Of a DNA stretch of 64,000 nucleotides, positions 18,901-64,000 are shown one piece after another (position 1 is the first letter of the stretch; every line of letters starts with the position of its first letter). The translations under genes and the position numbers were made by a program. The notes below the pieces were generated by a model that saw only the letters and a program-made list of their open reading frames with translations, was not told the origin of the DNA and did no database searches. The stretch spans positions 1-64,000 of the IMG/VR virus record IMGVR_UViG_3300028275_000006; one strand, given 5' to 3'.

Positions 18901-21900
18901 TTAGTTGACTTCTCATATGAAATGAGTTTCATAGATATTGCTGTAGGCGATTTAGTAAAAATTAAAAATGAAAAATCTGGTGGTTGGATTCTTTTAGAAA
19001 GAATTAATACACTAGTTACAGATAACATTTCTTTAAATTACACAACAGTAGGTCGTCAAAACGGAACAATCCAATTCAATAGTAATTTGTACAAGTTTAC
19101 AAATAGTAATATTGGATTTGATAGTTTTACCTATGATGGCGATGTATACGACGACGAACCAAAAGAAGAATTAAGAATTATTCTCGATGTCATTAAAAAT
19201 AATTTATTAATAGACGATTTAGAAGTAGAGTATAATAAGTTATTCTTTGCAAGTCTGCGTTACGTATTCTCAGAACAAACATTTGTTGATTGGGCATTTA
19301 AGACTTCGTTCGTTAAGAGTCAACACAACCTTGGCGAATTAAAACAAAAAGTTAATTATAAAAATGACAATCTTGCTAGTTACGAAGAATACATTAATGA
19401 AGTAAAACCTTACAGAACTAAAGTTAGAGAATTTATCAGCAATTACACAGCAACTGATAATACATATACAGGAACTACAGACTTTGACCTTCCAGCACGT
19501 TATGATACTGAAGAAGGAAAAATTCTTCCGTTTGATGTAAAAGTCAATAATTCTGTAATTACATATAACTCATCTGCAATATTAAATGCACCATACAGTG
19601 ATTGGTTAGATCATGCTGGATATCGTGTTACAGAAATTGTTGTTGTTGACGGTGGCTCAGGATACCAAGCCGCACCTGCTGTTGAAGTAGTTGGTGTGTG
19701 CAAAACTAAAGCCACTGCTAAAGCGTATATTTCACAAGGATCAGTAACAAAGATTGCAGTAGAAACTAAAGGAGAAGGTTACCTAACTACACCTACTATA
19801 GTTATTAGCGGATCAGTTGGCGCAAGCGGAGTAACAGCCAAGGCTACAGCAATTCTTGGAGAAGGCGTTACAAGAACAAACACCATTGGTGTTAAATTTG
19901 ACAGAATTATTCCGGAGTATCAAGTAAGTTCTATTACAATGTCGCAGACATTCGATGGTACAGGATCTAGAACATTGTTCCAGTTAAACTGGCCTATTGA
20001 TATTAGAACAAACAAGACTGCGGTAACAGTATCTAACGAAGAATTATTGTCTAGTGATTTTACAGTTTATAATAAGAAAGATACTTCGTTAGGATATACA
20101 CGTTATATTGGTATATTAGAGTTATCTACTGCGGCAGAAGTTGGCAGTTCTAATATTACTGTAACTTATACTAAAGATATAAGACTTCTTACAGCCGCAG
20201 ATAGAATTCAATATTACTATAGTCCAATAACAGGACAGATTGGTAAAGACCTAGGACAGTTAATGTCTGGAGTTGACTACGGCGGCGTTGAAATTACAGG
20301 GCTAGGATTTGAAATAAGTTCTGGTTGGGACGGACTTCCATGGTTTACTGCTGGCTGGGACGACTTCGATGAAGATTATACAGACTTTTTAGTTGTATCA
20401 GATGGTACAACACGTTCTTATAATCTGCCATATATTCCTGCAGATGGAGAACAGATTAACGTTTATATTAATGGTGTAAGAATTGATGACATTAATTATG
20501 ACGTTTACACCAGTGCCGAAACTGCATATAATACCGCAGCCGCATTATTAGAAGTTTATACTGCTGAAGAGATTGCTCTACAAGCAGATAAAGACGCTAA
20601 AGAAATAACAGTTAATTCTCTAACACAAGAGCTTATTGATACACAGGCAGTTATTGCTGACTTACAAGCACAGTTAGAAATTACCTCCCCAAGCGATCCT
20701 TTATACTTTGCTTTACAAACTACATTGGCAGAAAATCAAGCACAGGAAACACAGTTAATTTCAGACTTGACCATTGCCCAAGGCGAACTAGACGATGCAG
20801 AAGCATTACTAACAGCCAAACAAGTACAAGTGGCTAACAAAACTCTTGATGTTGCCGCAAAGTTAGCAACATTAAATGCAACCGATGAAATTACAAATCC
20901 AGATGCACAGATGCAGACATTTGTAGGAGACGGAAGCACTGATACTCCTATAGTCATTCCTGCATACGTAGATGTAAACAGCGGAGATACTATTATCTTC
21001 CGTAAGAGTACCAGCGATGGTAGTTTTAGACCAAACCAGCAATATTTAGACTCTGAAATCAGCGGCGGAGATTTTACATATACTACTGCCCGAGGCATTC
21101 GTGCAGAAGACATCAATCTTGACGGCGACAATTTTGTAACACCAACTAACAGCCATGCACCGGAAGAAGTAGTTACGGGACAGGTTGTAGACTCTGTAGC
21201 AATTACAGTCTACCATACTGTAGAAGACGGTACACCTATTATTGTCACAAGACATTATATAACAACAGAGCCAGAAAACGAGTTCTTAATTGGACAGCGT
21301 CCAAACAGCACTCAAGCGGCAGTTGTTAAATTAAACGGATTAATTAAAAAGCAAGATGTAGATTATACACTAAATTACGCTATGCAAAAAGTTGTGTTCC
21401 CAACTAACTTGCCTGTGGGCAGTGAAGTTGTGATTACTTCTATGAGCAAAAACGGTACAAGCATTCTTGATTCCGATTCATTTACTGGCGATGGTGTTTC
21501 TGTAGATTTTGTAACAGTAGCACGTTGGGATGGAGATTATTCTGCACTAGTTACTGTTAACGGTGTACCAGCCACAGTAACAACATTTGTAACAGATAAT
21601 ACTTACAGCGAAGTTGGAAACATTGGAATTAGATTTGCTACAGCACCAGTCAATACGGCAATTATCGACTACACGATTATTGGTACAGCATTAAACACAG
21701 TAAGTCGTGTTTCAACAGAAACTGTTGTTTATGACGGCACAAGTCAGGTGTATAGTTTAACAAATACACCGGCCAACTTACGTCCGTTTGATAATAACGT
21801 ATTAGTTGAATATGCTGGAAGAATTTTACGTCCGGCAGATACTGTTTATTTTGATGTCGTAGGAACAGTTCGTACTTACACAGTAAGCACAGTTGACTAT

Positions 21901-51952: not shown

Positions 51953-54622
51953 TTAAAACTCAAACAGTTGATTAAATGTGTTCTTTTCTTCTGTGGATTT
52001 AATATCCCAGTTAAGAACTCCAATTAAGTTTTCTAGTTTGTTATCTATAATAGTTTGTTCCATTTCTGCATCGTCGAATGGAAGTTCCATAAACCATTTA
52101 GGCAAACGTAGTTCGTCTACAGGATATGCTACCGATGTGTACCCTAGCGGATTTGCTTTGAGTTTACATACAATAACTTTTTGGCCGTCTGTGACCTGCA
52201 TACTATACTTGTCCGAATTCATTCGACGCAGAGTATTCCAATTAATACTTGCACGAACGTGTCCAGGCATATTAGCCTTGCCCTGTTTCTTTTCTTTGGC
52301 TTCGTACTCAGTAATGTTGTTGGCTCGCTTAGGAGAACCTTTCTCCCAACCAGGACGGGCCTTAAACTCTGTACGGAATTGAGTAATGTGATCTAATACT
52401 TGTTCTTCTGTAGCACCAGTTAGAACTTTCTCAAGTACATCACTTAAAAAGTCTTGAATAAATGCAGGAGTATCACTGCGCTTCAAGTCTAAGCCCATGG
52501 CCTTGATCTTGCCTGGTTTACCATCTACGTCTGCACGTTTGCCTTCTTTATCATAGTAAAGTACAGCATAACGTTTCTTAGTAATAAACAATCCTTTACT
52601 AGCAACAATTTCTCGACCTGCTCGAATAACATCACCACGACTTGGCGGGCAATGAAATGCCTGCTCCATAAACTTAACGAATGTACTGTTTACTTCCTCG
52701 CCAATTTGGTCATAGAGTGCAGTAACGTTTTCCTTAGTCCAAGGAATAACTCCAGATTCGATGTCTTTCTTTAATGTAGTATATGCACTGAAATAACAAG
52801 AGTCTGTATCACCATAGATAACTGCCTTACCTACGTGATTGTATTCACCTGTGATAATTTCATTTACTTTACTAGCCATGTGTTTGGCAATTTGTCTACC
52901 GACTAGAGTAGTTGACTGTCCAATACGTTTATCGAAGAATCTACAACCTGGGTTAAGAATAGCACCATACAAACTGTTCAAGTTAATCTTTTTAACTAAC
53001 TGACGTTTATCCCAATACTCTTCTTCGACCTTGTTACCTGCCTGAATACATTCTTTTAATTTGGCCTGCATTTCTTTACGTTCAGCATACCAACGCTTTA
53101 ACAGTCCAGGAATAATACCTTCCTTTTCGTAGGTAAAGATTGTACCATTTGCCGAAAGCATCCAAGGCTGATGACTATCAAAAATAACTTTATATACTTC
53201 TGCACCACTGTGTACAGTACTGTTGCCATCTTCCCAGTCTATGGTAATTTCCACATCTTTACGTTGTGCCATAACTGCTTCGTATTCGTCAGTTCCAAAC
53301 TTGCCTTCCCAACTGCCTGCAAACGATTTCTTTTTAAGAGTCATTTGTTCATGGATAAATGCTTCTGTCATTGTAGGACGTAATTGACCTACAATAGTTT
53401 CCGGACCCATGTTAAGCGCACGAATGGCGCTTGGATAAAGACTGTTAATATCCAGCGATCCAATCCAATCTTGCAGACCTTCTTTCGGATGTGCTACATA
53501 AGCACCAGCAGCCGCAGTATTTTCATCGTCATCTCGTTTAGGACGATTAGGAACTTGGAAACCTCTACGATGCGCTTCGTTAATAATAGCCTGTTCGGTA
53601 ACAGCCACAGCACCCATTGTAGTCTGTAATAATACAGTATTTTCATGTGCAATTTTATTAGCAAGGTCAATGAATTTAAGTTTTTCATCTAGTTTGTTTA
53701 ATAGTGCAACGTCTTGTCTGTTATACACAATAAATCTTTTAAAGTCATTGTTGTATAGTTGATCAAGTGTGCCTTCGTAAACAGTTTTGTTCTCGCCAAT
53801 TTCCATTTCACCGATGGCATCTAATCGATAGGTGTGTCGTTCTTCGTAGGTAAACTTGCGATAAAGTTCTAGACTGTCTAAGTGTACACGACCAATTAAG
53901 TCATATGTTTGTGCAGTCTTGCCATACTTTTCATATTCTCTACGTTTAGGAAATTGATTCCATAGACAGAAACGTCTTGTATCTTCTTTACTTAACACCT
54001 GTGTCACACGGTTAACAGTATAAGGAATATCATAGCCTTCGCTGTTCCAACCTGTGATAATGTCTGCATCTTGAATTAAATCTAAGAATGTTTCCAACAT
54101 ATCTGCTTCATTAGTAAACAGATGTGTATCTGGAATATCGGCTACTAACGCTTCGGCTTCAGCAAAGGTTAATGTCTTTGGAGGAAGAGCCAGTGTAATT
54201 AATTTGTCTAACCATTTTAGGTGAACTGTGATAGCAGTAATTGGCATAAACGCATCTTCAGGAGTGCTATAGCCGCGTTCTGGATCGAAGTCCACCTCAA
54301 TGTCGAAGAAGCAAATATTTAGATTAGGTGCATCTTGATTTAGATAGTTTTCGCTTAGATGTACAAAAATTGGATTGATGTCGCTTTCGTATAAGTCCTT
54401 ACCACTGTTAATGGCTAATTCTTTTCGAAAGTCTTTGGTGTTTTTACAAACTACCCTAGTCAGCGGATCGCCGTAAATGCTAGTAAACTTGCCTTTTTGA
54501 TCCGGATAGTAAAACGTGTAGCGTACAGGATGTTCTTTGAAAACCCGTTCGCCTTGGTCGTTTCGCTCTACGACCTTAATAATATCATTCTCTCTGTCAA
54601 AGAGAGCGTCAACGTAACTCAT
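51953..54622 (-). CDS. gp43: family B DNA polymerase (gp43-like)
   Basis: ExoI FFDIE, ExoII WNSEGYD, ExoIII YNRQD; DINSLYPS, KINLNSLYG, YGDTDS. Confidence 0.97.
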   Translation of the reverse strand: MSYVDALFDRENDIIKVVERNDQGERVFKEHPVRYTFYYPDQKGKFTSIYGDPLTRVVCKNTKDFRKELAINSGKDLYESDINPIFVHLSENYLNQDAPNLNICFFDIEVDFDPERGYSTPEDAFMPITAITVHLKWLDKLITLALPPKTLTFAEAEALVADIPDTHLFTNEADMLETFLDLIQDADIITGWNSEGYDIPYTVNRVTQVLSKEDTRRFCLWNQFPKRREYEKYGKTAQTYDLIGRVHLDSLELYRKFTYEERHTYRLDAIGEMEIGENKTVYEGTLDQLYNNDFKRFIVYNRQDVALLNKLDEKLKFIDLANKIAHENTVLLQTTMGAVAVTEQAIINEAHRRGFQVPNRPKRDDDENTAAAGAYVAHPKEGLQDWIGSLDINSLYPSAIRALNMGPETIVGQLRPTMTEAFIHEQMTLKKKSFAGSWEGKFGTDEYEAVMAQRKDVEITIDWEDGNSTVHSGAEVYKVIFDSHQPWMLSANGTIFTYEKEGIIPGLLKRWYAERKEMQAKLKECIQAGNKVEEEYWDKRQLVKKINLNSLYGAILNPGCRFFDKRIGQSTTLVGRQIAKHMASKVNEIITGEYNHVGKAVIYGDTDSCYFSAYTTLKKDIESGVIPWTKENVTALYDQIGEEVNSTFVKFMEQAFHCPPSRGDVIRAGREIVASKGLFITKKRYAVLYYDKEGKRADVDGKPGKIKAMGLDLKRSDTPAFIQDFLSDVLEKVLTGATEEQVLDHITQFRTEFKARPGWEKGSPKRANNITEYEAKEKKQGKANMPGHVRASINWNTLRRMNSDKYSMQVTDGQKVIVCKLKANPLGYTSVAYPVDELRLPKWFMELPFDDAEMEQTIIDNKLENLIGVLNWDIKSTEEKNTFNQLFEF

Positions 54623-55326: not shown

Positions 55327-55352
55327 AAAAAAAGCGGCCGAAGCCGCTTTTT
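55327..55352 (-). terminator. rho-independent terminator, probably bidirectional
   Basis: GCGGC-TTCG-GCCGC followed by T7 on minus and T5 on plus. Confidence 0.9.
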
Positions 55353-55365
55353 AAGTGTTAGTATT

Positions 55366-57144
55366 TTACTTTGCTGGAGCCGCAGGTGCTGCCGCAGGAG
55401 CCGCAGGTTGTTGTCCGCCTGCTGCCTTAGCCTTTTTAAGTTTGTCTAACTTGGAAATTACAACATCTAGACGTTTTTGGACATCTGCTGGTAAGCCTGC
55501 TTTGATTGCAGGATCTTGTCCATATTGATCTAGAACTTTCAAATGCTTCTGTAGTTCTGCTAGATCTTTTGGATCCATTTCAATGTCACCGCCGCTAAAT
55601 GCTTTCCATAGTGCGCCTAGTGCCAATGCCCCACCAACAGCGGCAGTTGCAATAGCCGCTTTTGGATTCTTTAGTACACCAAGTGCCTTTGATCCTGCGC
55701 CTTTGACAAAGTCCATGGCACGTTGTCCCCAACTTGGTTTTGGAGTAATGTCTCTGAATGGAACATCGATGACGTTTGGATTAGCACCACCTGGTGTAGA
55801 TAGTGCCGGTAGTTTGCCGCCAGGACCAGGTAGTGCTGGCACAGGTGCTTCACTTAGATAATCTCTTGTAATAGCAATTTGTTCTGCTTCGCTAAAGTAT
55901 TTGATATTTTTCATAACAAACGCTCTTGCTTCGTTTTCAGTCATTGCTAATACATCTTCTTCAGTTACACTTTCAGAAATTTTGTACTTAGTAACGATTG
56001 CTTCGATAGCAGTTAATGATTGTGTTAACTGACTACGTGCAACGATATTTTTACCGTCTGCCAATAGTGTAGATAGTTCAGGAGTAACTTTACCAGTTTC
56101 TGGTTTGCCTGCCATCTTTTCAAATGCTTTAATACCAGCAACAGTTTTAGGACCCATCTTACCATCGATTGGACCAGGGTCAACACCTAATGCTTTTAGT
56201 TGTTCTTGAATTTTCTGAATTGCAGGATCTGCACCAGCAGTCTTCTTATCTTGTGCAGTCTTATCTTGTGCAGTCTTGTCTTGAGATGCTTTAGTATCAG
56301 CGGCAACTTTATCTGCTTCTGCACTTGCGGCATCTAAGTCTTTATCCATCTTTGCATCGTATTTTGCTTTTTCGGCTGCTTCAACATCTGCAACAGTTTT
56401 CTTAGCATCATCGATTGCTTTACGTACTTCTGGATCATCTCCTAAAGTTTCTAATTCGTCAATTAACGCATTAATTTGATCTGCCACTGCCTTGGCTTCT
56501 GGACTTAGTTGCTCTTGCATTGGTACATCACCAACTACGTCTTGGAATTCTCTCATCAATGATTCAAAGATACTTCCTTCACCAACTTTTAATCCACCAA
56601 GTTTTGGAGCATTAGCAGTCATGCCTGGCATCTTAAGTCCAGTTCCGCTACTTGCTGTTCCGGTATCTGATCCACCAGTAATAGATTGTAACTTTTTAAC
56701 CAAGTCCGCTAATTGCGGAAGTTTTTCTGCTTTAATTTCGGCAGTCTGGCGATCTTTATTAACTTTGTCACTAGTACCTTTAACTGCGGTATCGTGTTCG
56801 CCTTTGTCGTCGCCACGGAACATACGTCCTAGTGCTGTAGATGTTTTTGCGTTTTGTGGAACTAAACCTAGATCTGCAAGTGTTTTATCTGCGCTTGATG
56901 TTGCAGTTGCGGCAATACTGTATTTGCCACCCATGCTGTTTGGCTGTCCTTGCTTGCCAACAAAGTAACCGCTAACAGGATCATACAAACCTGGTAGTTT
57001 GTGTTTCCATGCTAGGTCATTAAGGATCTCTGCACGTTCTTGCTCGTCTGATTTACCAGCAACTGCGGCTTCAACGTCTTTGATTGTGATAGCCTCTGCA
57101 AGTACTACAGTATCCAATTTGTTTAGAATTGATCTAATATCCAT
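55366..57144 (-). CDS. putative head-internal/ejection protein with a peptidoglycan-binding domain
   Basis: IQEQLKALG..PGPIDGKMGPKTVAGIKAF (PG_binding_1 pattern); leader MDIRSILNKLD..LAE; late promoter upstream. Confidence 0.65.
   Translation of the reverse strand: MDIRSILNKLDTVVLAEAITIKDVEAAVAGKSDEQERAEILNDLAWKHKLPGLYDPVSGYFVGKQGQPNSMGGKYSIAATATSSADKTLADLGLVPQNAKTSTALGRMFRGDDKGEHDTAVKGTSDKVNKDRQTAEIKAEKLPQLADLVKKLQSITGGSDTGTASSGTGLKMPGMTANAPKLGGLKVGEGSIFESLMREFQDVVGDVPMQEQLSPEAKAVADQINALIDELETLGDDPEVRKAIDDAKKTVADVEAAEKAKYDAKMDKDLDAASAEADKVAADTKASQDKTAQDKTAQDKKTAGADPAIQKIQEQLKALGVDPGPIDGKMGPKTVAGIKAFEKMAGKPETGKVTPELSTLLADGKNIVARSQLTQSLTAIEAIVTKYKISESVTEEDVLAMTENEARAFVMKNIKYFSEAEQIAITRDYLSEAPVPALPGPGGKLPALSTPGGANPNVIDVPFRDITPKPSWGQRAMDFVKGAGSKALGVLKNPKAAIATAAVGGALALGALWKAFSGGDIEMDPKDLAELQKHLKVLDQYGQDPAIKAGLPADVQKRLDVVISKLDKLKKAKAAGGQQPAAPAAAPAAPAK
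56245..56289. repeat. 15-bp tandem repeat encoding QDKTA
   Basis: CTTATCTTGTGCAGT twice plus one degenerate copy. Confidence 0.8.
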
Positions 57145-57170
57145 TTGTTTGTCCCCAAAATCTTATTAAG

Positions 57171-57178
57171 TATTTATC
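57171..57178 (-). promoter_or_regulatory. late promoter GATAAATA
   Basis: 26 nt upstream of the start at 57144. Confidence 0.65.
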
Positions 57179-57180
57179 AG

Positions 57181-57266
57181 TGCTCACTTTAAATCGTCAG
57201 GGTAGCGAATCCGTTGATTAGCCCAGCAGCCGGGCACATAACCCCAAACGGTCCTAGGGTATGTTC
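57181..57266 (-). ncRNA. candidate pseudoknotted structured RNA
   Basis: GC-rich non-coding island; three stems plus a loop CCGUU/AACGG pseudoknot. Confidence 0.5.
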
Positions 57267-57365
57267 TTACAATTCATAAGGAATTCCGGCTAATCCGCAT
57301 CCAAAGCGAGCTAACCCTTCTACAATGTCATTAAACAGGGCTGTAAGGGTTTCTCGGACGGTCAT
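57267..57365 (-). CDS. small ORF, 32 aa (MTVRETLTALFNDIVEGLARFGCGLAGIPYEL)
   Basis: GAGGA SD 8 nt upstream; below the ORF-track cutoff. Confidence 0.45.
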   Translation of the reverse strand: MTVRETLTALFNDIVEGLARFGCGLAGIPYEL

Positions 57366-57405
57366 AGCCATCTTCCTCTGGGTAAACTGGATATTCGTTT
57401 TCCAT
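57331..57405 (-). CDS. small ORF, 24 aa (MENEYPVYPEEDGYDRPRNPYSPV)
   Basis: Start overlaps the dps stop codon (TAATG). Confidence 0.4.
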   Translation of the reverse strand: MENEYPVYPEEDGYDRPRNPYSPV

Positions 57406-57839
57406 TATTTTAGAGTTGCTCGCAACATCCATGAATGTTTGCGATGAGCATCTTGACGATCTGCTAGGAAATTAGCAAGACCAAATTCATTGTTTGTTTC
57501 TGCAATTTTGTACACTAGGCCAAATAAGTTAGCCATTTTATCAGAGTCTTCTAATAAAATTTGTGTCATAGATAGTGCATCTGGAATCTCTGTTTCATCA
57601 TCAATTTTAGTAAGCATAGTGAAACGTTCAAAACTACCAGGAGTGTAACTACCACTCTTGCGAATATTTTCTGCAAAAGTATCTATACTTCCATATACTT
57701 CTTCGTAGATGTTACCAAATAGTTCATGAAATTCTGCAAAATCAGGTCCTTCTACGTTCCAGTGAAAGTAGTGTGCCTTTAGATAAAAACTAAATTCTGA
57801 TGCGAATACTATTTTAAGTGCTTTTGCTAATTCTTCCAT
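57405..57839 (-). CDS. dps: Dps / ferritin-like protein
   Basis: AHYFHWNVEGPDFAEFHELF...DTFAENIR; HRKHSWML. Confidence 0.93.
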   Translation of the reverse strand: MEELAKALKIVFASEFSFYLKAHYFHWNVEGPDFAEFHELFGNIYEEVYGSIDTFAENIRKSGSYTPGSFERFTMLTKIDDETEIPDALSMTQILLEDSDKMANLFGLVYKIAETNNEFGLANFLADRQDAHRKHSWMLRATLK

Positions 57840-58073
57840 TTATGCCACCTGTGCTACTGCGTATACGGCTGTGACTAACATAGTTTTTAAATTTATGTCG
57901 TCTGCCTCTTCTTCTAATTTATCTGTTCTGACTAGGTCTAGCATTAATTCTCTAAACTCGTCTTCGCCTATTTGTCCTTGCTGACGTGCTTCACATATCT
58001 GCAATGCCACTGCGGCACGTTCAGCCGCCCATGGGCGACCACATTGTGTTAACATCTGCAACTGTTCTATCAT
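57840..58073 (-). CDS. hypothetical protein
   Basis: 77 aa, coupled to the lipoprotein gene. Confidence 0.6.
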   Translation of the reverse strand: MIEQLQMLTQCGRPWAAERAAVALQICEARQQGQIGEDEFRELMLDLVRTDKLEEEADDINLKTMLVTAVYAVAQVA

Positions 58074-58459
58074 TAGAATCTCCCAAGAACTGCACTAGCG
58101 GCTTTATCCGCTTGTGTAGCCATTAATTTCTTTTTAATTTCGCAGTAAGTTTCGCTACCCTGCTTTTCTGTACTGCGTTTATAAAAGTCATCTACAGTTT
58201 CCTGCATAGGTTTAACTAACTTAAGAACGTCCTGTTGACGCCAACCTTTGCTTTCACTATAAAGTTGAAACCATTCTAAATTATCTTTGATAATTTTAAC
58301 CTGTGGTGCGTGTGCTTGTTTACAATCTAATTGTGCTACACTTTGACGCACGTCTATAATACGTGCTGATTGATTAGGATCGCTGAAACTAGGAATCCAA
58401 CTCTTAACAGTAGCGCAACCTGTTAATGATATTGCTAATGCTAAGACAAGGGCTCTCAT
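58073..58459 (-). CDS. putative lipoprotein
   Basis: Lipobox LTGC after the hydrophobic leader MRALVLALAIS. Confidence 0.7.
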   Translation of the reverse strand: MRALVLALAISLTGCATVKSWIPSFSDPNQSARIIDVRQSVAQLDCKQAHAPQVKIIKDNLEWFQLYSESKGWRQQDVLKLVKPMQETVDDFYKRSTEKQGSETYCEIKKKLMATQADKAASAVLGRF

Positions 58460-59331
58460 TTTCCATCCTTGACACAGTTATCAACAGTCTTACCGCCTTT
58501 CTGTTTGGTACCCATACGTTTGTAACCATCCCAGCAAGCCTTACCATCGACACCTTTTTGCTTTTCTTCTGCTAATGTAAGGTAGTCTAAGAAAGATTTT
58601 TTAGTTTCCATAGTTGCTGGTTGTTGCTGTTGTACTACGTGTGTGGCAGCACCGTCAGGAACAGATGCTGTATTAGTTACATTCTTGTTAGCATCTTGTT
58701 GACGTCTAACTTTTGCAACACCTAAATCGTATTCGGCATCACTGGCACCTGTTTCCTTGCCAGTTTTGTCATAGGTCTTAACAACATTTAATGGACCGTT
58801 CATATACTTTACAGTAATATTGCCAGTGACTAAATCGTGTTCCTGACTATAGCCGTTAAACATTGGACTAGAATATTTGATTGCTTTACCTGCTTTGTCG
58901 TAGGTAAATGAACCAAACCCGCTATCGTGTACTCTAGTACCGTCTTGCTTTACTGTAAGTTTCTCACCGCCTTCTAAATCGTAACGACCTGGTTTAGAAA
59001 AATCGCCCTGTGGAAATGCAGGAGCATTTGGAATTTGTAGATTGGGTTTAAAACCCGGCTCCCCAGGTCTGCCTGCTTCTTCTAGATCGCTGTCTTCTTT
59101 TTTATTTGCAGTTTTAATATTATACATCTTAGCCACTGCTTTTTCATCATACGGTCTAAAGTCGCTGAGTTTTTCTTTTGCGGCATCAGCGGCAGACGCA
59201 ACTTTGTCAGCAACTGTTTTTAATGTATTGTTTTCCTGCACAATAGACACGAAACGGCGCATGTCATTTGCGCCTTCTACTCTACGACTAGATGCTTTAT
59301 CTAGTGCTTGTAAAATTTGTTTCATGTCCAT
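58456..59331 (-). CDS. putative head-internal protein
   Basis: Leader MDMKQILQALD; Glu-delimited segments; C-terminal CWDGYKRMGT..GGKTVDNCVK module. Confidence 0.55.
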   Translation of the reverse strand: MDMKQILQALDKASSRRVEGANDMRRFVSIVQENNTLKTVADKVASAADAAKEKLSDFRPYDEKAVAKMYNIKTANKKEDSDLEEAGRPGEPGFKPNLQIPNAPAFPQGDFSKPGRYDLEGGEKLTVKQDGTRVHDSGFGSFTYDKAGKAIKYSSPMFNGYSQEHDLVTGNITVKYMNGPLNVVKTYDKTGKETGASDAEYDLGVAKVRRQQDANKNVTNTASVPDGAATHVVQQQQPATMETKKSFLDYLTLAEEKQKGVDGKACWDGYKRMGTKQKGGKTVDNCVKDGK

Positions 59332-59335
59332 GATA

Positions 59336-60751
59336 TTATAGGCCTGATAAGAATTTCAAACGAGATAAGTCAGTAGATTCTTTAACTGTTTCTTTTTTCT
59401 TATCTGCTTTGCCGCCCATTTCGTCTTTGCCTAAACGACCAGCAACTACATCACCTTTGGTTACTTTGTCATATGGTTTAGCATTGTTGGCTAAGTTACC
59501 ATCGCCCTTTTTCTTTTCAGCAACAACTTTTCTAACAATAGACTTAACTAGGTTAGATTCTTGTACTGCTGGCGTAGGAGCAGTTGTACCACCTTCGGCT
59601 TCTAATTTCTTTCTAAGAGCACTAATAGTTCTTGCTAAGTTTGTCTTATCGGCACCTGTAGCAGTTTTGTATTGTTCTTCGTATTTTGCGAGTGCTTTTG
59701 CAGTTGGGCTATCTGCTTCAGCACCTTCTTTAAATGCTGGATTTGTAGGACCAGGAGTCTTTTCGCTCCACTCTTTACCCTTGTTTGGACCAGAAGTTAC
59801 TTTTGGATACTTGCCAGTCTTTGGATCTTTCTTAGGAGCGGCTGTAGCACCATCTGGTGGGCTCATTACTTGACCTTCGTCAGTTTTCTTTTTCTTTTCT
59901 GGAAGACCTTTATGCTTTGTACTAGCAAAGTCTTTGGCATCTTTGTCTTTCATGCCTTTAGCAACTTTAGCAACTTCCTTACTGGCTGGCTTTTCGCCTT
60001 TCTTTGCGGCGTGTACCATGCCCATAAATTTTTGTTGTGCTTTGCTTACAGCCTTTTCGACTACTTGTGTAAGGGCTTCCTTAATCATCTTGTCTTTTTC
60101 TTTCTTGTTCTTGGCGTCTTTTTCAGCCTTGGCAATTTTTTCTGCGGCTTCGTCGATTTCATCCTTAACACGGATGCTGGCCACAGTCCAACCTGGATTG
60201 TCGCGTTTCATACGATCACGTACTTCGCCTTGGCTTTCGCCTTCGTCGGCAACAGTAGTAACACCACGAGTTTTGTTATCTTTTTCAAGTTTAACAAAGT
60301 ATTGTTTCTTTTCTGATTTATCAACTTGACCTTTCTTTTTGTCAGTTGCACGTACACCAGACGCTTCTTTAACAGCACCTTCTAACAAGGATGCTAATTT
60401 TTGTTCATATGTAGTCATTTCGTCAATTTTCCTTTCTTCGTCATCCATGTCAGACACTGGCTCTTCGCTTGGTAGCTCTTGTTCAGCATCACCTGTAATG
60501 TCGTCGATGTTGGATGCGTTGCTGCCATCGCCGAACTTAACTTGGTACTCCATATAGTGATATACACTATCTAAGTAATCTGCAGATTTAGTAATTTTAG
60601 CCTGTACCCAACCTTCTAAATCTTGTCCGTCTTGAATCATTTGGAACAATTTCATAGAGTACTTTGCGGCTCTATATAGTTCTGAACGTGCCATAGCCCC
60701 TTCGTGGTCGTCCACTGGTCCTGGCATAACTGGTCTCATCTGGTCGTGCAT
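59336..60751 (-). CDS. putative head-internal polyprotein
   Basis: Late promoter upstream; many Lys-rich modules each starting after a Glu. Confidence 0.55.
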   Translation of the reverse strand: MHDQMRPVMPGPVDDHEGAMARSELYRAAKYSMKLFQMIQDGQDLEGWVQAKITKSADYLDSVYHYMEYQVKFGDGSNASNIDDITGDAEQELPSEEPVSDMDDEERKIDEMTTYEQKLASLLEGAVKEASGVRATDKKKGQVDKSEKKQYFVKLEKDNKTRGVTTVADEGESQGEVRDRMKRDNPGWTVASIRVKDEIDEAAEKIAKAEKDAKNKKEKDKMIKEALTQVVEKAVSKAQQKFMGMVHAAKKGEKPASKEVAKVAKGMKDKDAKDFASTKHKGLPEKKKKTDEGQVMSPPDGATAAPKKDPKTGKYPKVTSGPNKGKEWSEKTPGPTNPAFKEGAEADSPTAKALAKYEEQYKTATGADKTNLARTISALRKKLEAEGGTTAPTPAVQESNLVKSIVRKVVAEKKKGDGNLANNAKPYDKVTKGDVVAGRLGKDEMGGKADKKKETVKESTDLSRLKFLSGL

Positions 60752-60772
60752 GGTTAAAATCTCCTGGTGTTG

Positions 60773-60780
60773 TATTTATC
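60773..60780 (-). promoter_or_regulatory. late promoter GATAAATA
   Basis: 21 nt upstream of the start at 60751. Confidence 0.65.
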
Positions 60781-61435
60781 GTTTTGCTATACTGCCGCCT
60801 GTTAACAGATTAGCCTTCATATCTAGGGCATTTTTAGCAGTACCGTCTTTATTTTTAGGTGTTTTTCCGGCTTTATTTTTGTATACAGGACCCACACTAA
60901 CCATACCTGCACTAGTGCCTCCCGGTGTTGCAGTTTCGTCAAACTTATCGATTCCACGACTCTGCATTCCGCCCTTCTTACGTTTAGCGGCTAATTCTTC
61001 TAAACCGTGACGTACTTGCTCTAAATTCTGTTCTAAACCCATGAACATGCCGCCTTTGGCTAACTTAGTAATTTGATGCCAAGTTGCTAGGTCATCGCTT
61101 TCTGCCATACGTGCTAATTCTTGTAACTGTTTACGTGTTTGCAAAATGCGTCCTTTTAACGTCATAGGATTTGCTTTATTGTGACTGTGAATCATAGGAT
61201 CCATAGGATCATCTGTAGCGGCAATAGGTGCTTCTAAGGTAAGTTGATCTGCAACAGTTTCGCTCATCTGTGCCATTTGTACAGCCTGCGCGGCCAATCT
61301 TGCAGGAATACCTTCTTTAACAAGTTTATCCTGTGCTTGTTGTTCGCTTAGTCCTTGTGCTAATAATGCCTTGGCACGTTTAGCCAAAGCCATCATATCA
61401 ATAACACCTTCGTTTATAATGTCTATCAATCTCAT
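60776..61435 (-). CDS. putative head-internal protein
   Basis: Leader MRLIDIINE; C-terminal ETATPGGTSAG module. Confidence 0.55.
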   Translation of the reverse strand: MRLIDIINEGVIDMMALAKRAKALLAQGLSEQQAQDKLVKEGIPARLAAQAVQMAQMSETVADQLTLEAPIAATDDPMDPMIHSHNKANPMTLKGRILQTRKQLQELARMAESDDLATWHQITKLAKGGMFMGLEQNLEQVRHGLEELAAKRKKGGMQSRGIDKFDETATPGGTSAGMVSVGPVYKNKAGKTPKNKDGTAKNALDMKANLLTGGSIAKR

Positions 61436-63177
61436 TTCTTTTTTCCTTGACGCATATTAATTTGCCAGTGTGCTAATTGTTTTTTACGTGGACTAGCAGA
61501 ATCGCTACTGCGTATCTTTTTTAACTGTGCTATGCTCATGCCTTTAGTGATGCCGTGACGTTTACTATCACCTTTATCTTGTGGATTTTTTCCATCGGCA
61601 AAGTTTTCATCTACATTAAATGTCGGATCAACTTTTTGACGCGGCATATTCTTAGGCCGCTTTGGATCAACCGGGTCAATGTCTGTGGTATCAAGGCCCA
61701 ACTTTTTCAAAGCCGCAATATATTTGTGCTCTTCTTCTTCACTGCCAAAAGATACAATAGTACTAGGAGGCCCTTTACCAAAATCTTTATTTGATAAATT
61801 TTTTAAGTTGGCAATATTCTTACCTAACTTGTACCAATCATACACATCACTTACATCAACTCTAACAGTGCCTCTAGGCATTGTAGGTTTAATTTCAGGA
61901 CCTCTTGGTTTTTCATTAGGGTGCTGGTCTTCTTCTGCGTGTTTAAAATATTGTACTTGACGTTCACGTTTCTCTGCACCGGCGCGAGTTGGATACTTAC
62001 CTAAGTTCTTATTACCATGTTTGCTTTTTAATTCGTAACCGCCTTTAACTTTAACAATATGTTCGTTAAACTGTTCTGGATTCATTTTACCCCAGTAACG
62101 TAGCAATACTCCAGCAAGAGCATTGGCTTCGTTTTCGTCTGGACTGCCAGTTGCACCATCTAATTCTCTTGCTTCGTTTTGTTTGCGATGCACTAATTCG
62201 TGTGCTAGTGTTCGCATAATATCCATTTGATGTCTATCTTTAACAGATACAACTATGTCTTGTGTTTCAGGATCAAAGTATCCAAGTGCAGTAGTCTTTG
62301 TATCACCTACTAATTTAATACGTGGTGCTTGTTCTATTTCTAAAAGTTTGATAGCCCATAATGCAAAGTCTTTGATACGTTGCTTTTTATCTGGAGTCCA
62401 TGCTTCCATCAATCCGCCGCCGTCACCGCCGTCTCCCGCAGGCACACTACCTACACCACTGTAGCCTGCATCGGTACCATATAGTCCGTAAGGACCTGGT
62501 CCATATAACGCACCGTATTTGTTTCTGCGTTTTTTCTTACGACCTTCGTCTACATCTTTGTCACCACTAGTGGCAATTAATTTTCCTTGACTTCTATCTA
62601 GACTTTTTAACTGCTGTGGTTCGTGTTCTTCTTCACCTTGTCCCACACGTTTAGCACGTTTAAGTCCATCTAATATTACTTGTAAACTATCTTCGTCTGC
62701 TTGATATTTGATACCAATACCGCCAGCGGCTTCCCAAGCACTGATATTACTACCTCTGTCGTCAATTAATACGTTAGGCATTCCGCTAGGATTTCTAGCG
62801 TACTTGGCTTTGTTTGAAACAATGTAAATGTTGTCTGGCAGTTGATTTAAGTGTTCATCGATCCAAATACGTTTGTATTTTTCACTGCCTTCGTGGTCGC
62901 CGCGTAATGGGCTAGAACAAATATTGTAGCCACCGGCCACATCAACTACAATATCAATTAGTTTGTCTGCTGTAGGAAACTTTGGTAGACGTGCAAAAAA
63001 GTCTGTTCCTACCATTTTGTTTAATGTAGGATCAGTCTTCGCTGGTGGAATGTCTCTGTAGTTTCCGCTTTTAATGCCAGCAAGTTTAGCATACTCTGTG
63101 AAAAAGTCTGCAAGAACTCCGTCCATGTCTACATAGACTTCCATGCCTTGGGGTAATTCTAAATCGCTTGCTCTCAT
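61432..63177 (-). CDS. multidomain protein: HAD 5'(3')-deoxyribonucleotidase, HEXXH (ImmA/IrrE-like) domain and basic modules
   Basis: YVDMDGVLADF...LIDDR; RTLAHELVHRKQ...ENEANALAG. Confidence 0.8.
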   Translation of the reverse strand: MRASDLELPQGMEVYVDMDGVLADFFTEYAKLAGIKSGNYRDIPPAKTDPTLNKMVGTDFFARLPKFPTADKLIDIVVDVAGGYNICSSPLRGDHEGSEKYKRIWIDEHLNQLPDNIYIVSNKAKYARNPSGMPNVLIDDRGSNISAWEAAGGIGIKYQADEDSLQVILDGLKRAKRVGQGEEEHEPQQLKSLDRSQGKLIATSGDKDVDEGRKKKRRNKYGALYGPGPYGLYGTDAGYSGVGSVPAGDGGDGGGLMEAWTPDKKQRIKDFALWAIKLLEIEQAPRIKLVGDTKTTALGYFDPETQDIVVSVKDRHQMDIMRTLAHELVHRKQNEARELDGATGSPDENEANALAGVLLRYWGKMNPEQFNEHIVKVKGGYELKSKHGNKNLGKYPTRAGAEKRERQVQYFKHAEEDQHPNEKPRGPEIKPTMPRGTVRVDVSDVYDWYKLGKNIANLKNLSNKDFGKGPPSTIVSFGSEEEEHKYIAALKKLGLDTTDIDPVDPKRPKNMPRQKVDPTFNVDENFADGKNPQDKGDSKRHGITKGMSIAQLKKIRSSDSASPRKKQLAHWQINMRQGKKK

Positions 63178-63461
63178 TTTTTATTTACCGGTTTTTCGCC
63201 TGTCATGTAAGGTAAACTAAACCATAACTGAAACCACTCAGGTGTTCCAGGTTTAATGTTTTGTTCTCTCTGTATTCTGCCTTTATCACTGCCAGTAACA
63301 CTGATGTTACTGCCCTGATACTCGTGTAGTCTTGCGGCATGACCTAAGCCTGCAAGATACTGCATAGATTTAATTTCGTATATAGGATCAGAAGGATCAA
63401 GTAAGCAGTCGTCTGGACTGTCTTGATTTAAATTTTCTGTACTGATTCTATATTGTTTCAT
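63174..63461 (-). CDS. hypothetical protein
   Basis: 95 aa, IKPGTPEWFQLWF. Confidence 0.6.
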   Translation of the reverse strand: MKQYRISTENLNQDSPDDCLLDPSDPIYEIKSMQYLAGLGHAARLHEYQGSNISVTGSDKGRIQREQNIKPGTPEWFQLWFSLPYMTGEKPVNKK

Positions 63462-63464
63462 TTA

Positions 63465-64000
63465 TTATGAAACCTTAACAACAGTAAATCCTGCTTTTAC
63501 GTAGTGATCGTGAGCATAATTCTTTGCGTGTTCGCGACCTTTAGTAGTAGTTACACGGGGTGTTCTTTCAACTTCATTTCCGTCCTTGTCAATAAGAGTA
63601 AAACGGAATGAATACTCTTCTGGATCCGGTCCATTAACATATTCATCATCTTCGCGTTCACGACGTCCAAAGCCTGTGCGACTAGAATCGTAATCGCGTT
63701 GATACGCATCGTAACTACCGTAACGGCCTTCTTCTAATTCTGACATTTTCATAGCATCTTTTTCCTTCTTAGGTTCTTTTTCTTTTTTAGGCTCTTCTTT
63801 TTTCTTAGGTTCTTCTTTTTTCTTAGAATCTTTTTTCTTTGCTTTTTCCTTCGCCTTTTCTTCATAGGGCATCAAGTACTCGGCAACTAAGTCAAAGAAT
63901 GGTTTACCCATAACAGGTGTTTCTGAACTTACGCCAGCGGCATCGCTAAATGCTTGTCTGTCGCCTTTGGCTACTGCTTCACGTAAACTTGTAGCAGAGC
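63465..64000 (-). CDS. 3' part of a cytidyltransferase-like protein, truncated by the window end
   Basis: Frame stays open beyond 63911 and reads SATSLREAVAKGDRQAF (SAT.xR signature); K/E-rich linker follows. Confidence 0.55.
   Translation of the reverse strand, partial: SATSLREAVAKGDRQAFSDAAGVSSETPVMGKPFFDLVAEYLMPYEEKAKEKAKKKDSKKKEEPKKKEEPKKEKEPKKEKDAMKMSELEEGRYGSYDAYQRDYDSSRTGFGRREREDDEYVNGPDPEEYSFRFTLIDKDGNEVERTPRVTTTKGREHAKNYAHDHYVKAGFTVVKVS

What the first reader, a model, noticed from the sequence alone, without database searches (positions are those of the whole stretch)
55366..63911. Cluster of probable head-packaged polyproteins diced after Glu
Seen: leaders such as MDIRSILNKLD..LAE, MDMKQILQALD..VQE and MRLIDIINE. 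Bodies consist of short, mostly Lys-rich modules each beginning after a Glu (IDE|M, IKE|A, VVE|K, FKE|G, LME|A, FNE|H, VDE|N, LEE|G). Late promoters precede two of these genes. Established: the T4 prohead protease gp21 cleaves after Glu in capsid-targeting leaders. Inference: these are cassettes of peptides and enzymes released inside the head and injected with the DNA, a likely source of unknown host-takeover or anti-defence factors.
Basis: partly seen in the sequence, partly recalled or inferred. Interest (0 to 1): 0.6.

Follow-up and report, generated by a model that had tools for sequence, protein, structure and literature searches.

The report
Capsid-addressed cargo polyproteins of a jumbo phage
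A river jumbo phage related to T4 carries a gene cluster whose proteins start with T4-like capsid-address tags and are built from shuffled modules joined at sites that look like cuts made by its head protease, so they are probably loaded into the capsid as cargo, though nobody has yet seen them there.

Summary
The window is the start of a 212-kb viral contig. An overlapping 270-kb contig of the same phage extends it to at least 325 kb and carries a T4-type head module: portal gp20, gp21 protease and gp23 capsid protein.

Most large proteins in 55366-64000 carry conserved N-terminal leaders:
- a 9-residue type, M-[KR]-x-x-[ED]-[LIF]-[LIF]-x-E, close to the T4 tags MKTYQEFIAE and MELITELFDE;
- a 33-residue MDMK.ILQA type.

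A module that sits directly behind a short leader in one phage lies inside a longer protein in another. There the junction is hydrophobic-x-Glu in 77 of 134 cases (background 2.4%), and in 55 of 113 in a second data set. One recurrent junction copies the predicted maturation site of the phage's own capsid protein.

A GATAAATA motif shared with tail-fibre genes precedes two of the genes. Cyanophage homologues of two modules were detected in purified virions.

Corrections:
- Exact TATAAATA is absent from the window.
- Three genes in the interval lack these features, and the 95-aa protein has no leader.
- The four sites named in the 471-aa protein have no comparative support.
- The last ORF starts outside the window, and the cluster runs on to 66778.

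Packaging, cleavage and injection are inferred, not shown.

The parts
55329..55352 (-). Terminator-like hairpin just downstream of the 592-aa gene
   Evidence: 10-pair stem followed by a T run. RNA-library contigs end at 55362-55376.
55366..57144 (-). 592-aa leader-bearing protein. It has a leader (aa 1-17, nt 57094-57144), a PG_binding_1 domain (aa 307-357, nt 56074-56226), a hydrophobic TM-like segment (aa 496-516, nt 55597-55659) and an Ala/Pro-rich tail.
   Evidence: Homologues of 524-1016 aa keep the N-terminus MD[ILF]R[SK]L[IL][ND]KL[DE]. In 3 of 4 RNA runs a contig spans just this gene.
57171..57178 (-). GATAAATA, probable late promoter, 34 nt upstream of the 592-aa gene
   Evidence: The motif is shared with tail-fibre and baseplate genes. 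ATAAATA is depleted genome-wide (33 observed, about 100 expected), and 23 of the 33 copies lie upstream of ORFs.
57405..58459 (-). Three ORFs that show none of the system's features: Dps/ferritin-like (57405-57839), 77 aa (57840-58073), and a lipoprotein with an LTGC lipobox (58073-58459)
   Evidence: They have no leader and no module homology. Ferritin scores 72.8 bits.
58456..59331 (-). 291-aa protein with the long leader (aa 1-33, nt 59233-59331, ending VQE) and a C-terminal Cys-motif module after LAE (aa 256-291, nt 58459-58566)
   Evidence: The C-terminal module recurs in T4-like cyanophages: S-PM2 p145 and S-RSM4_061.
59336..60751 (-). 471-aa Lys-rich protein without a leader. It contains a DUF3008 module (aa 234-287, nt 59891-60052).
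   Evidence: The DUF3008 part is 78% identical to S-SCSM1 ORF93, annotated as a virion protein. The protein is conserved as a whole in 45 relatives.
60773..60780 (-). GATAAATA, probable late promoter, 29 nt upstream of the 471-aa gene, inside the 3' end of the 219-aa gene
60776..61435 (-). 219-aa polyprotein: short leader MRLIDIINE (nt 61409-61435), a small helical module, module X after LTLE (aa 69-167, nt 60935-61231), and a basic tail module after FDE that resembles the capsid-protein maturation site (aa 168-219, nt 60779-60934)
   Evidence: Module X folds as an extended segment plus a three-helix bundle (pLDDT 85) with no PDB match.
61432..63177 (-). 581-aa polyprotein made of these parts:
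- NT5C/HAD nucleotidase (aa 14-154, nt 62716-63138);
- a KKKRR-GPGPYG module after VDE (nt 62404-62544);
- a zincin HExxH module after LME (nt 62062-62403);
- a middle block after FNE (nt 61606-62061);
- an NFADGKNP module after VDE (nt 61435-61605).
   Evidence: One search shows the basic, zincin, DQHPNE and NFADG modules each lying directly behind a short leader in other phages.
63174..63461 (-). 95-aa protein whose part after IYE (aa 30-95) stands alone as a 66-78-aa protein in other phages
   Evidence: In 14 subjects the HSP starts at the subject's N-terminus.
63465..64000 (-). 3' part of a 323-aa protein whose start (MRLRNLFE, at 64436) lies outside the window. It consists of a cytidylyl/adenylyltransferase domain, a Lys/Glu-rich linker, and a module after LEE (nt 63468-63728).
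   Evidence: phrog_3041/395 cytidyltransferase. It is homologous to the S-SCSM1 virion NMNAT ORF91, E 7e-12.

Best explanation
The cluster encodes cargo for the phage head. Its layout is an address tag, then modules, with a protease site at each joint.

**Shown from sequence**
- Two conserved families of N-terminal leaders.
- Freely shuffled modules.
- Hydrophobic-x-Glu at module junctions.
- A gp21-type protease and a T4-type scaffold/capsid module in the same phage.
- A late-type promoter motif before two of the genes.

**Inferred mechanism**
1. The genes are expressed late.
2. The leader binds the scaffolding core, so the protein is enclosed as the capsid shell forms. This is what the 10-residue T4 capsid-targeting sequence does.
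3. The prohead protease then removes the leader and separates the modules at exposed hydrophobic-x-Glu joints.
4. The released pieces stay in the head with the DNA.

**Likely cargo**
- Small Lys-rich peptides.
- A nucleotidyltransferase, a HAD nucleotidase and a zincin.
- Peptidoglycan-binding and lytic proteins.

**More speculative**
- The cargo enters the host with the DNA.
- There it may neutralise DNA charge, open the cell wall, and act on nucleotides or host defences.
For: **Head machinery in the same phage**
- G001 112574-270181 equals G000 1-157605 at 99.997% identity.
- Its left part encodes portal (PF07230, 371 bits), protease (PF03420, 91.6 bits) and capsid protein (PF07068, 328 bits) in T4 order, with a 79-aa protein in the gp67 slot and a 363-aa coiled-coil protein in the gp22 slot.
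- The protease aligns with T4 gp21 through the His and Ser motifs.
- Four other large relatives all carry the protease.

**Leaders resemble T4 targeting sequences**
- T4 IPII and IPIII begin MKTYQEFIAE|A, and Alt begins MELITELFDE.
- This phage has MRAKEFITE|A, MRLRELFVE|S and MRLIDIINE|G.
- Leader positions use many synonymous codons and chemically similar residues, so selection acts on the peptide.

**Junctions**
- Exact hydrophobic-x-Glu at 77/134 junctions against a 2.4% background.
- Replicated on new loci: 55/113 against 1.6%.
- Junction logo: P3 is V/L/I/F/M in 83 of 105 contexts, P1 is E, P1' is A/T/G/N/S.
- This matches the gp21 rule L/I-X-E (PMC9026906).

**Capsid-protein site mimicry**
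- The T4 gp23 cleavage site FLTE|A aligns with YLSE|S..GATSAGNV in this phage's capsid protein.
- That sequence is conserved in four relatives.
- The same E-x-A-TAGATSAGN[VI] follows a leader or a junction in 26 non-redundant cargo proteins, and occurs nowhere else in this phage's proteome.

**Expression**
- GATAAATA is shared with tail genes.
- River metatranscriptome contigs bracket the 592-aa gene from its stop codon to just downstream of the motif in 3 of 4 runs.

**Virion evidence from relatives**
- S-SCSM1 ORF93 (DUF3008 module), ORF91 (NMNAT-like, starting MKSFLQFLKE|A) and their neighbours are annotated as virion proteins.
- PMC9602691 reports 45 virion proteins for that phage and NMNAT-like proteins in three cyanophage virion proteomes.
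- Another leader-bearing protein of this phage matches a virion structural protein family, phrog_14154.
Against: - There is no direct protein evidence for this phage or any close relative. Packaging, cleavage and injection are all inferred.
- The short leader pattern is not specific on its own. It or its profile also picks T4 vs.6 and gp2.
- The 471-aa and 95-aa proteins lack a leader.
- The density of hydrophobic-x-Glu in the cargo proteins is ordinary.
- In cyanophage S-RSM4 the homologous DUF6267 and nucleotidyltransferase genes have no such leader and sit among replication genes. These enzymes could therefore work in the cytoplasm.
- The capsid, scaffold and protease genes are not directly preceded by the GATAAATA motif, so calling it a late promoter rests on the tail genes.
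- The RNA libraries may contain DNA.
- The protease-substrate complex prediction gave no answer.
Confidence: 0.6

Rival explanations
1. The proteins do enter the prohead and are cut, but they are core or scaffold accessories and DNA counter-ions, not effectors. Their fragments either leave the head or merely neutralise DNA charge, and have no role in the host.
For: - The modules are Lys-rich: 10-16% Lys, with tails of 26-28% K+R.
- In T4, gp22, gp67 and gp68 are cut into fragments that mostly leave the head (PMC9026906).
- The scaffold-slot and gp67-slot proteins of this phage have leader-like N-termini.
Against: - Several modules are enzymes: an HxGH nucleotidyltransferase, a HAD nucleotidase, a zincin, and a cell-wall hydrolase with a PG-binding domain. 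These make little sense as packing material.
- NMNAT-like proteins persist in mature cyanophage virions.
Confidence: 0.15
2. These are ordinary cytoplasmic auxiliary proteins. The conserved gene start is a translation-initiation feature or a recombination joint that promotes module shuffling, and Glu at junctions reflects linker composition.
For: - The cluster lies next to the DNA polymerase on the replication-gene strand.
- Cyanophage S-RSM4 homologues lack the leader.
- A-rich codons such as AGA are preferred at leader positions 2 and 4.
- The short pattern occurs by chance at about 1-3% of T4 N-termini.
Against: - Leader residues are kept through many synonymous and conservative changes.
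- The junction signal is specific: hydrophobic at P3, Glu at P1, a small residue at P1'.
- One junction copies 12 residues of the capsid-protein maturation site.
- Homologues are found in virions.
- Two genes carry the tail-gene promoter motif.
Confidence: 0.15
3. The leader addresses the proteins to another phage-encoded machine, such as the ClpP/Clp-ATPase or the Hsp70/DnaJ set, for timed degradation or folding rather than to the capsid.
For: The phage encodes ClpP (220.8 bits), a ClpA/B-like AAA+ protein, Hsp70, DnaJ, Cpn10 and Hsp20.
Against: - Nothing in the sequences links the leaders to Clp or Hsp70.
- This does not explain the Glu junctions or the capsid-protein site mimicry.
- T4 uses near-identical leaders without encoding these machines.
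Confidence: 0.05

Closest known systems
T4 internal proteins IPI, IPII, IPIII and Alt, with their capsid-targeting sequence (CTS), processed by gp21
   Same: - A short N-terminal tag that ends in hydrophobic-x-Glu.
- Near-identical wording: T4 ..EFIAE|A against ..EFITE|A here.
- Diverse cargo behind a conserved tag.
- A gp21-family protease and a T4-type scaffold/capsid module in the same phage.
- Genes scattered outside the head operon (PMC9026906, PMC3012670).
   Different: - About 15-20 tagged genes per genome here, against a handful in T4.
- A second, 33-residue leader type.
- Cargo strung together as multi-module polyproteins that include enzymes.
- One-residue register shift in the tag.
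- A junction that copies the capsid-protein maturation site.
- Packaging has not been tested here.
Virion-associated NMNAT/cytidylyltransferase and neighbouring 'virion proteins' of T4-like cyanophages (S-SCSM1 ORF89-93, S-PM2 p141-146)
   Same: - Homologous modules: DUF3008 at 78% identity, the nucleotidyltransferase at E 7e-12, the Cys motif, and DUF6267.
- The same genome neighbourhood beside replication genes.
- The cyanophage proteins were detected in purified virions (PMC9602691).
   Different: - In cyanophages the modules are mostly separate small genes, often without the leader.
- Here they are fused into longer proteins with leaders and Glu joints.
- The cyanophage papers I read do not link them to a targeting tag or to the protease.
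Inner-body and ejection proteins of phiKZ-like giant phages (phiKZ, SPN3US), processed by gp175/gp245
   Same: Many head-internal proteins are cut after Glu by a diverged gp21 homologue. Some are cut into several pieces and ejected into the host (PMC9026906, PMC7411985, PMC10052503).
   Different: - I recall the phiKZ motif as having a small residue (S/A/G) at P3, where these junctions have a hydrophobic one. I did not check this in a paper.
- No homology to the proteins here was seen, though none was specifically sought.
- No short portable tag has been described for that group.
Polyvalent proteins of phages and conjugative elements (Iyer et al. 2017)
   Same: Multi-domain proteins that combine enzymes, a zincin-like metallopeptidase and small domains. 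They are proposed to be packaged, processed and delivered with the DNA (PMC5512222).
   Different: - None of the anchor domains used in that paper's searches (MuF, N4 virion RNAP, DarB, ArdC, ART) turned up in the Pfam/PHROG scans.
- Processing here is predicted to be by the prohead protease at coded joints, not by autoproteolysis.
- These proteins are much smaller.

Membership tests
T4-type CTS-tagged head cargo | N-terminal propeptide of about 10-19 residues ending in L/I-X-E | tested here: met
   - The 219-, 291-, 323- and 592-aa proteins, and at least 10 others in the genome, have such leaders.
- They were compared with T4 IPI/II/III and Alt read from NC_000866.
- The 471-aa and 95-aa proteins do not meet this feature.
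T4-type CTS-tagged head cargo | Phage encodes a gp21-family prohead protease and a scaffolding core | tested here: met
   - PF03420 scores 91.6 bits in the overlapping contig of the same phage.
- A coiled-coil protein occupies the gp22 slot and a 79-aa protein the gp67 slot.
T4-type CTS-tagged head cargo | Protein present in mature heads with the propeptide removed | not testable with these tools
   Only indirect evidence exists: cyanophage homologues of two modules were found in virion proteomes.
T4-type CTS-tagged head cargo | Ejected into the host with the DNA | not testable with these tools
   No data.
Substrates of a gp21-type protease | Cleavage sites with hydrophobic P3 and Glu at P1, shared with the capsid protein | tested here: met
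   - Junction statistics and logo.
- The capsid-protein site YLSE|S..GATSAGNV is copied in cargo junctions.
- Actual cleavage has not been shown.
Polyvalent proteins (Iyer et al. 2017) | Fusion of several effector domains, anchored on a packaging or transfer-linked domain (MuF, N4 vRNAP, DarB, relaxase, ArdC) | tested here: not met
   - The multi-domain criterion is met by the 581-aa protein.
- No anchor domain appears in the Pfam, PHROG or NCBIfam scans.
phiKZ-like inner body proteins | Processing motif (S/A/G)-X-E (recalled from the phiKZ literature, not checked here) and membership in the phiKZ paralogue families | tested here: not met
   - P3 at the junctions is V/L/I/F/M in 83 of 105 contexts.
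- The head module is of the T4 type, with Gp23 at 328 bits.
Cyanophage virion NMNAT/cytidylyltransferase | HxGH nucleotidyltransferase domain homologous to S-SCSM1 ORF91 and S-PM2 p142 | tested here: met
   - BLASTP E 7e-12 and 2.5e-6.
- phrog_3041 and phrog_395 cytidyltransferase.
- TIGR00125 scores below its cut-off.

The most novel reading that the evidence does not exclude
T4-related jumbo phages of fresh water may use a portable address-and-cut code. It consists of a short or long leader, hydrophobic-x-Glu joints, and sometimes a copy of the capsid-protein maturation site. With it they could load dozens of freely shuffled enzymes and peptides into the capsid as polyproteins. If so, injected cargo could be read directly from metagenomic sequence, and these clusters (12-16% of local genes) would be a large unexplored pool of first-minute host-takeover and anti-defence factors.
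Probability: 0.35. Interest if true: 0.8.

Novelty: new variant of a known kind. Interest (0 to 1): 0.65.

Why it matters
What phages inject besides DNA is known for only a few model phages. If the leader-plus-joint code holds, it gives a sequence rule for predicting virion cargo in uncultivated T4-related phages, where hundreds of such proteins are already visible in IMG/VR.

It would also explain why nucleotidyltransferases keep turning up in cyanophage virion proteomes. It would supply a catalogue of small modules to screen for entry, DNA-condensing or anti-defence functions. And the leaders could serve as packaging tags, as the T4 tag already does in engineering.

Tried and rejected
- **Exact T4 late promoter TATAAATA:** 0 copies in the window. 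Replaced by the GATAAATA variant.
- **Megablast and tblastn against cultured phages:** nothing for the region or for the 592- and 219-aa proteins. Only single modules and enzymes match, all in cyanophages.
- **PF03420 in the window's own contig:** no hit. The protease lies on the overlapping contig.
- **Fixed-register profile of the short leader:**
  - It does not score the T4 IP tags, because of a one-residue shift.
  - It gives false or unexplained hits in T4 (vs.6, gp2).
  - Leader calls therefore need support from homology or context.
- **Junctions extrapolated from HSPs that start after the leader:** noisy, with no peak at offset 0. I rely on the whole unselected set.
- **Complex prediction of protease with a junction peptide:** no answer, score 0.00, so it is evidence neither way.
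- **Module X:** confident three-helix-bundle model, but no PDB match. The Atlas feature search returned only unnamed viral clusters.
- **Stop-codon readthrough joining the genes:** rejected. No gene in the cluster ends in TAG.
- **Dense dicing of the 471-aa protein:** no comparative support.
- **The large protein searches:** not run, because IMG/VR loci and family scans already gave relatives.
Full report
**What the window is**

The window is the first 64 kb of a 212,542-base IMG/VR virus record. A second record of 270,181 bases overlaps it: its positions 112574-270181 equal positions 1-157605 of the window's record at 99.997% identity. Together they give at least 325 kb of one phage.

- The DNA polymerase at 51953-54622(-) is 47-50% identical to those of the jumbo phages Phosso and Atu_ph07 and about 45% to PBECO4.
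- The DNA comes from river metagenomes.

**Genes in the interval**

All genes lie on the minus strand.

| Coordinates | Size | Features |
|---|---|---|
| 55366-57144 | 592 aa | PG_binding_1 domain, hydrophobic segment |
| 57405-57839 | 144 aa | Dps/ferritin |
| 57840-58073 | 77 aa | none |
| 58073-58459 | 128 aa | lipoprotein |
| 58456-59331 | 291 aa | long leader, Cys-motif tail |
| 59336-60751 | 471 aa | DUF3008, Lys-rich |
| 60776-61435 | 219 aa | short leader, three modules |
| 61432-63177 | 581 aa | NT5C plus an HExxH zincin |
| 63174-63461 | 95 aa | module after IYE |
| 63465-64436 | 323 aa | nucleotidyltransferase |

The real start, MRLRNLFE, lies outside the window. The same kind of gene continues to 66778: a 382-aa DUF6267 protein starting MRLRELFVE, a 284-aa protein starting MILLE, and a 114-aa protein.

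**The leaders are real and form families**

The N-termini across the genome show a recurring short leader, M-[KR]-[ILVA]-x-[ED]-[LIF]-[LIFV]-x-E, and a 33-residue leader starting MDMK.ILQA and ending V-x-E.

- The 219-aa protein has 158 relatives in IMG/VR.
- In 80 loci fetched through it, 187 of 1469 ORFs start with the short pattern and 46 with the long one. The short pattern follows only 32 of 8540 internal Met residues.
- The coding pattern of the long leader hits at least 120 viral contigs. It heads 70 distinct proteins, those complete in the loci being 114-692 aa.
- Leader positions use many synonymous codons and chemically similar residues, so the peptide itself is under selection.
- The short pattern alone is not fully specific: it or its profile also picks T4 vs.6 and gp2.

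**Comparison with T4**

From the T4 record, IPII and IPIII start MKTYQEFIAE|A, IPI starts MKTFKEFTS..ITE|A, and Alt starts MELITELFDE. This phage has MRAKEFITE|A, MRAKEFIDE|S, MRLRELFVE|S and MRLIDIINE|G. The wording is the same apart from a one-residue shift.

The T4 literature states the following (PMC9026906, PMC3012670):
- These 10-19-residue propeptides target cargo to the scaffolding core.
- gp21 cuts after L/I-X-E.
- The T-even internal proteins are diverse, with only the tag conserved.

**The head machinery is present**

The overlapping contig carries, in T4 order:
- portal (PF07230, 371 bits);
- a 79-aa protein in the gp67 slot, then 191-aa and 260-aa proteins;
- a gp21-family protease (PF03420, 91.6 bits);
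- a 363-aa coiled-coil protein in the gp22 slot;
- the capsid protein (PF07068, 328 bits).

The protease keeps the His and Ser motifs of gp21. Four other large related contigs all have the protease. The scaffold-slot protein has 28 hydrophobic-x-Glu sites in 363 residues, against 1.8% per residue in the proteome. That is what one expects of a protein that is diced.

**Module junctions**

The bodies are mosaics. The same module sits directly behind a short leader in one phage and inside a longer protein in another.

- Mapping the end of the leader onto the longer protein gives 134 junctions. Of these, 77 are exactly hydrophobic-x-Glu (background 2.4%) and 88 end in Glu (background 7%).
- With a tolerance of three residues, 114 of 127 junction groups have a Glu, against a null of 38%.
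- The junction logo reads P3 V/L/I/F/M (83 of 105), P1 Glu, P1' A/T/G/N/S.
- On 800 new proteins fetched independently, the result repeats: 55 of 113 against 1.6%.

In the window, these junctions are supported:
- LTLE|A and FDE|T in the 219-aa protein;
- VDE|G, LME|A, FNE|H and VDE|N in the 581-aa protein;
- VQE|N and LAE|E in the 291-aa protein;
- LEE|G in the 323-aa protein;
- IYE|I in the 95-aa protein.

The 471- and 592-aa proteins are conserved as units. Sites inside them have no such support.

**A copy of the capsid-protein maturation site**

- Aligned with T4 gp23, the known cut FLTE|A falls on YLSE|S..GATSAGNV in this phage's capsid protein. That sequence is conserved in four relatives.
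- The string E-x-A-TAGATSAGN[VI] also follows a leader or a junction in 26 non-redundant cargo proteins of related phages. Within this phage's proteome the pattern occurs only in the capsid protein.
- The tail of the window's 219-aa protein is a weaker copy.
- This is the most direct link between these proteins and head maturation. Whether it is an extended protease recognition site or a capsid-binding element is unknown.

**Expression**

- TATAAATA is absent from the window.
- ATAAATA is depleted genome-wide (33 observed, about 100 expected). Of the 33 copies, 23 lie within 80 nt upstream of ORFs, mostly 26-38 nt before tail-fibre and baseplate genes.
- GATAAATA lies 34 nt before the 592-aa gene and 29 nt before the 471-aa gene.
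- Six river metatranscriptome runs hold the stretch. In three of the four laid on it, a contig spans only the 592-aa gene, from its stop codon to just downstream of the motif. These are contigs and the libraries may contain DNA, so this is weak support.

**Evidence from cultured relatives**

- No cultured phage has the 219- or 592-aa proteins.
- Single modules do occur in T4-like cyanophages, in the same neighbourhood beside replication genes.
- The DUF3008 module is 78% identical to S-SCSM1 ORF93.
- The nucleotidyltransferase matches S-SCSM1 ORF91 (E 7e-12), which starts MKSFLQFLKE|A.
- Both are annotated as virion proteins. [quoted passage not shown]
- In S-RSM4, by contrast, the homologous enzymes have no leader.

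**What the modules may do**

- Identified domains: a cytidylyl/adenylyltransferase, a HAD nucleotidase, a zincin, and PG_binding_1. Elsewhere in the genome, one leader-bearing protein combines PG_binding_1 with a cell-wall hydrolase domain, and another matches a virion structural protein family.
- Many modules are short and basic.
- Module X folds as a three-helix bundle with no known relative.

**Verdict**

- The best reading is a T4-type address-and-cut system expanded into modular polyproteins. It is a new variant of a known kind.
- I found no paper that mentions these leaders. Neither the polyvalent-protein paper nor the cyanophage genome comparison I checked mentions a capsid-targeting tag.
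- Packaging, cleavage and delivery remain inferences. My confidence in the head-cargo mechanism is about 0.6, and lower for injection and host takeover.

Noticed in passing
G000 about 127.1-134.8 kb and 139927-140000 (locus L089 4147-11803 and 16927-17000): There is an array of 31 tRNA genes, plus a separate tRNA with anticodon CTA (amber-reading; ARAGORN labels it Pyl). TAG is the rarest stop codon (14 of 257 ORFs), and no gene in the cluster studied ends in TAG.
   Followed up: partly
G000 67475-71019, 78243-78587, 106296-106919, 166474-169463, 174457-174846 (loci L086, L088, L091): The phage encodes ClpP, a ClpA/B-like AAA+ protein, Hsp70, DnaJ, Cpn10, Hsp20, peptide deformylase, NifU/IscU and ribosomal protein S21. 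The S21 gene has an ATAAATA motif upstream. This may tie in with published S21-encoding huge freshwater phages (PMC9723584).
   Followed up: partly
window 9907-23991 (+); also G000 85207-94485 and G001 67906-87474: There are giant ORFs of 4694, 3092, 3835 and 2670 aa among tail-fibre-like genes. Several are preceded by the GATAAATA motif.
   Followed up: no
whole G000, and G001 1-112573: ATAAATA is about three-fold depleted genome-wide, and the surviving copies concentrate 13-61 nt upstream of ORFs. The capsid, scaffold and protease genes are not directly preceded by it.
   Followed up: partly
L116 5010-5219 (Synechococcus phage S-SCSM1 ORF93): This 69-aa virion protein (DUF3008) has no N-terminal leader, but it ends in ..TFKEFLEYIE. 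That looks like a capsid-targeting tag placed at the C-terminus.
   Followed up: no
L109 (T4 record), genes 2 and vs.6: T4 gp2, the DNA-end protector, starts MAIFQIINES, close to MRLIDIINEG here. T4 vs.6 starts MKAYQILEG. Both score high with the leader profile. I do not know whether either is processed.
   Followed up: no
window 57405-57839 (-): A Dps/ferritin-like DNA-binding protein (72.8 bits) sits in the middle of the cluster. It has no leader.
   Followed up: no
window 57337 (loose ends in RNA runs X19 and X21): Two metatranscriptome contigs join position 57337, in the spacer upstream of the 592-aa gene, to unrelated sequence. This could be a variant or a neighbouring strain with a different insert at that point.
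   Followed up: no
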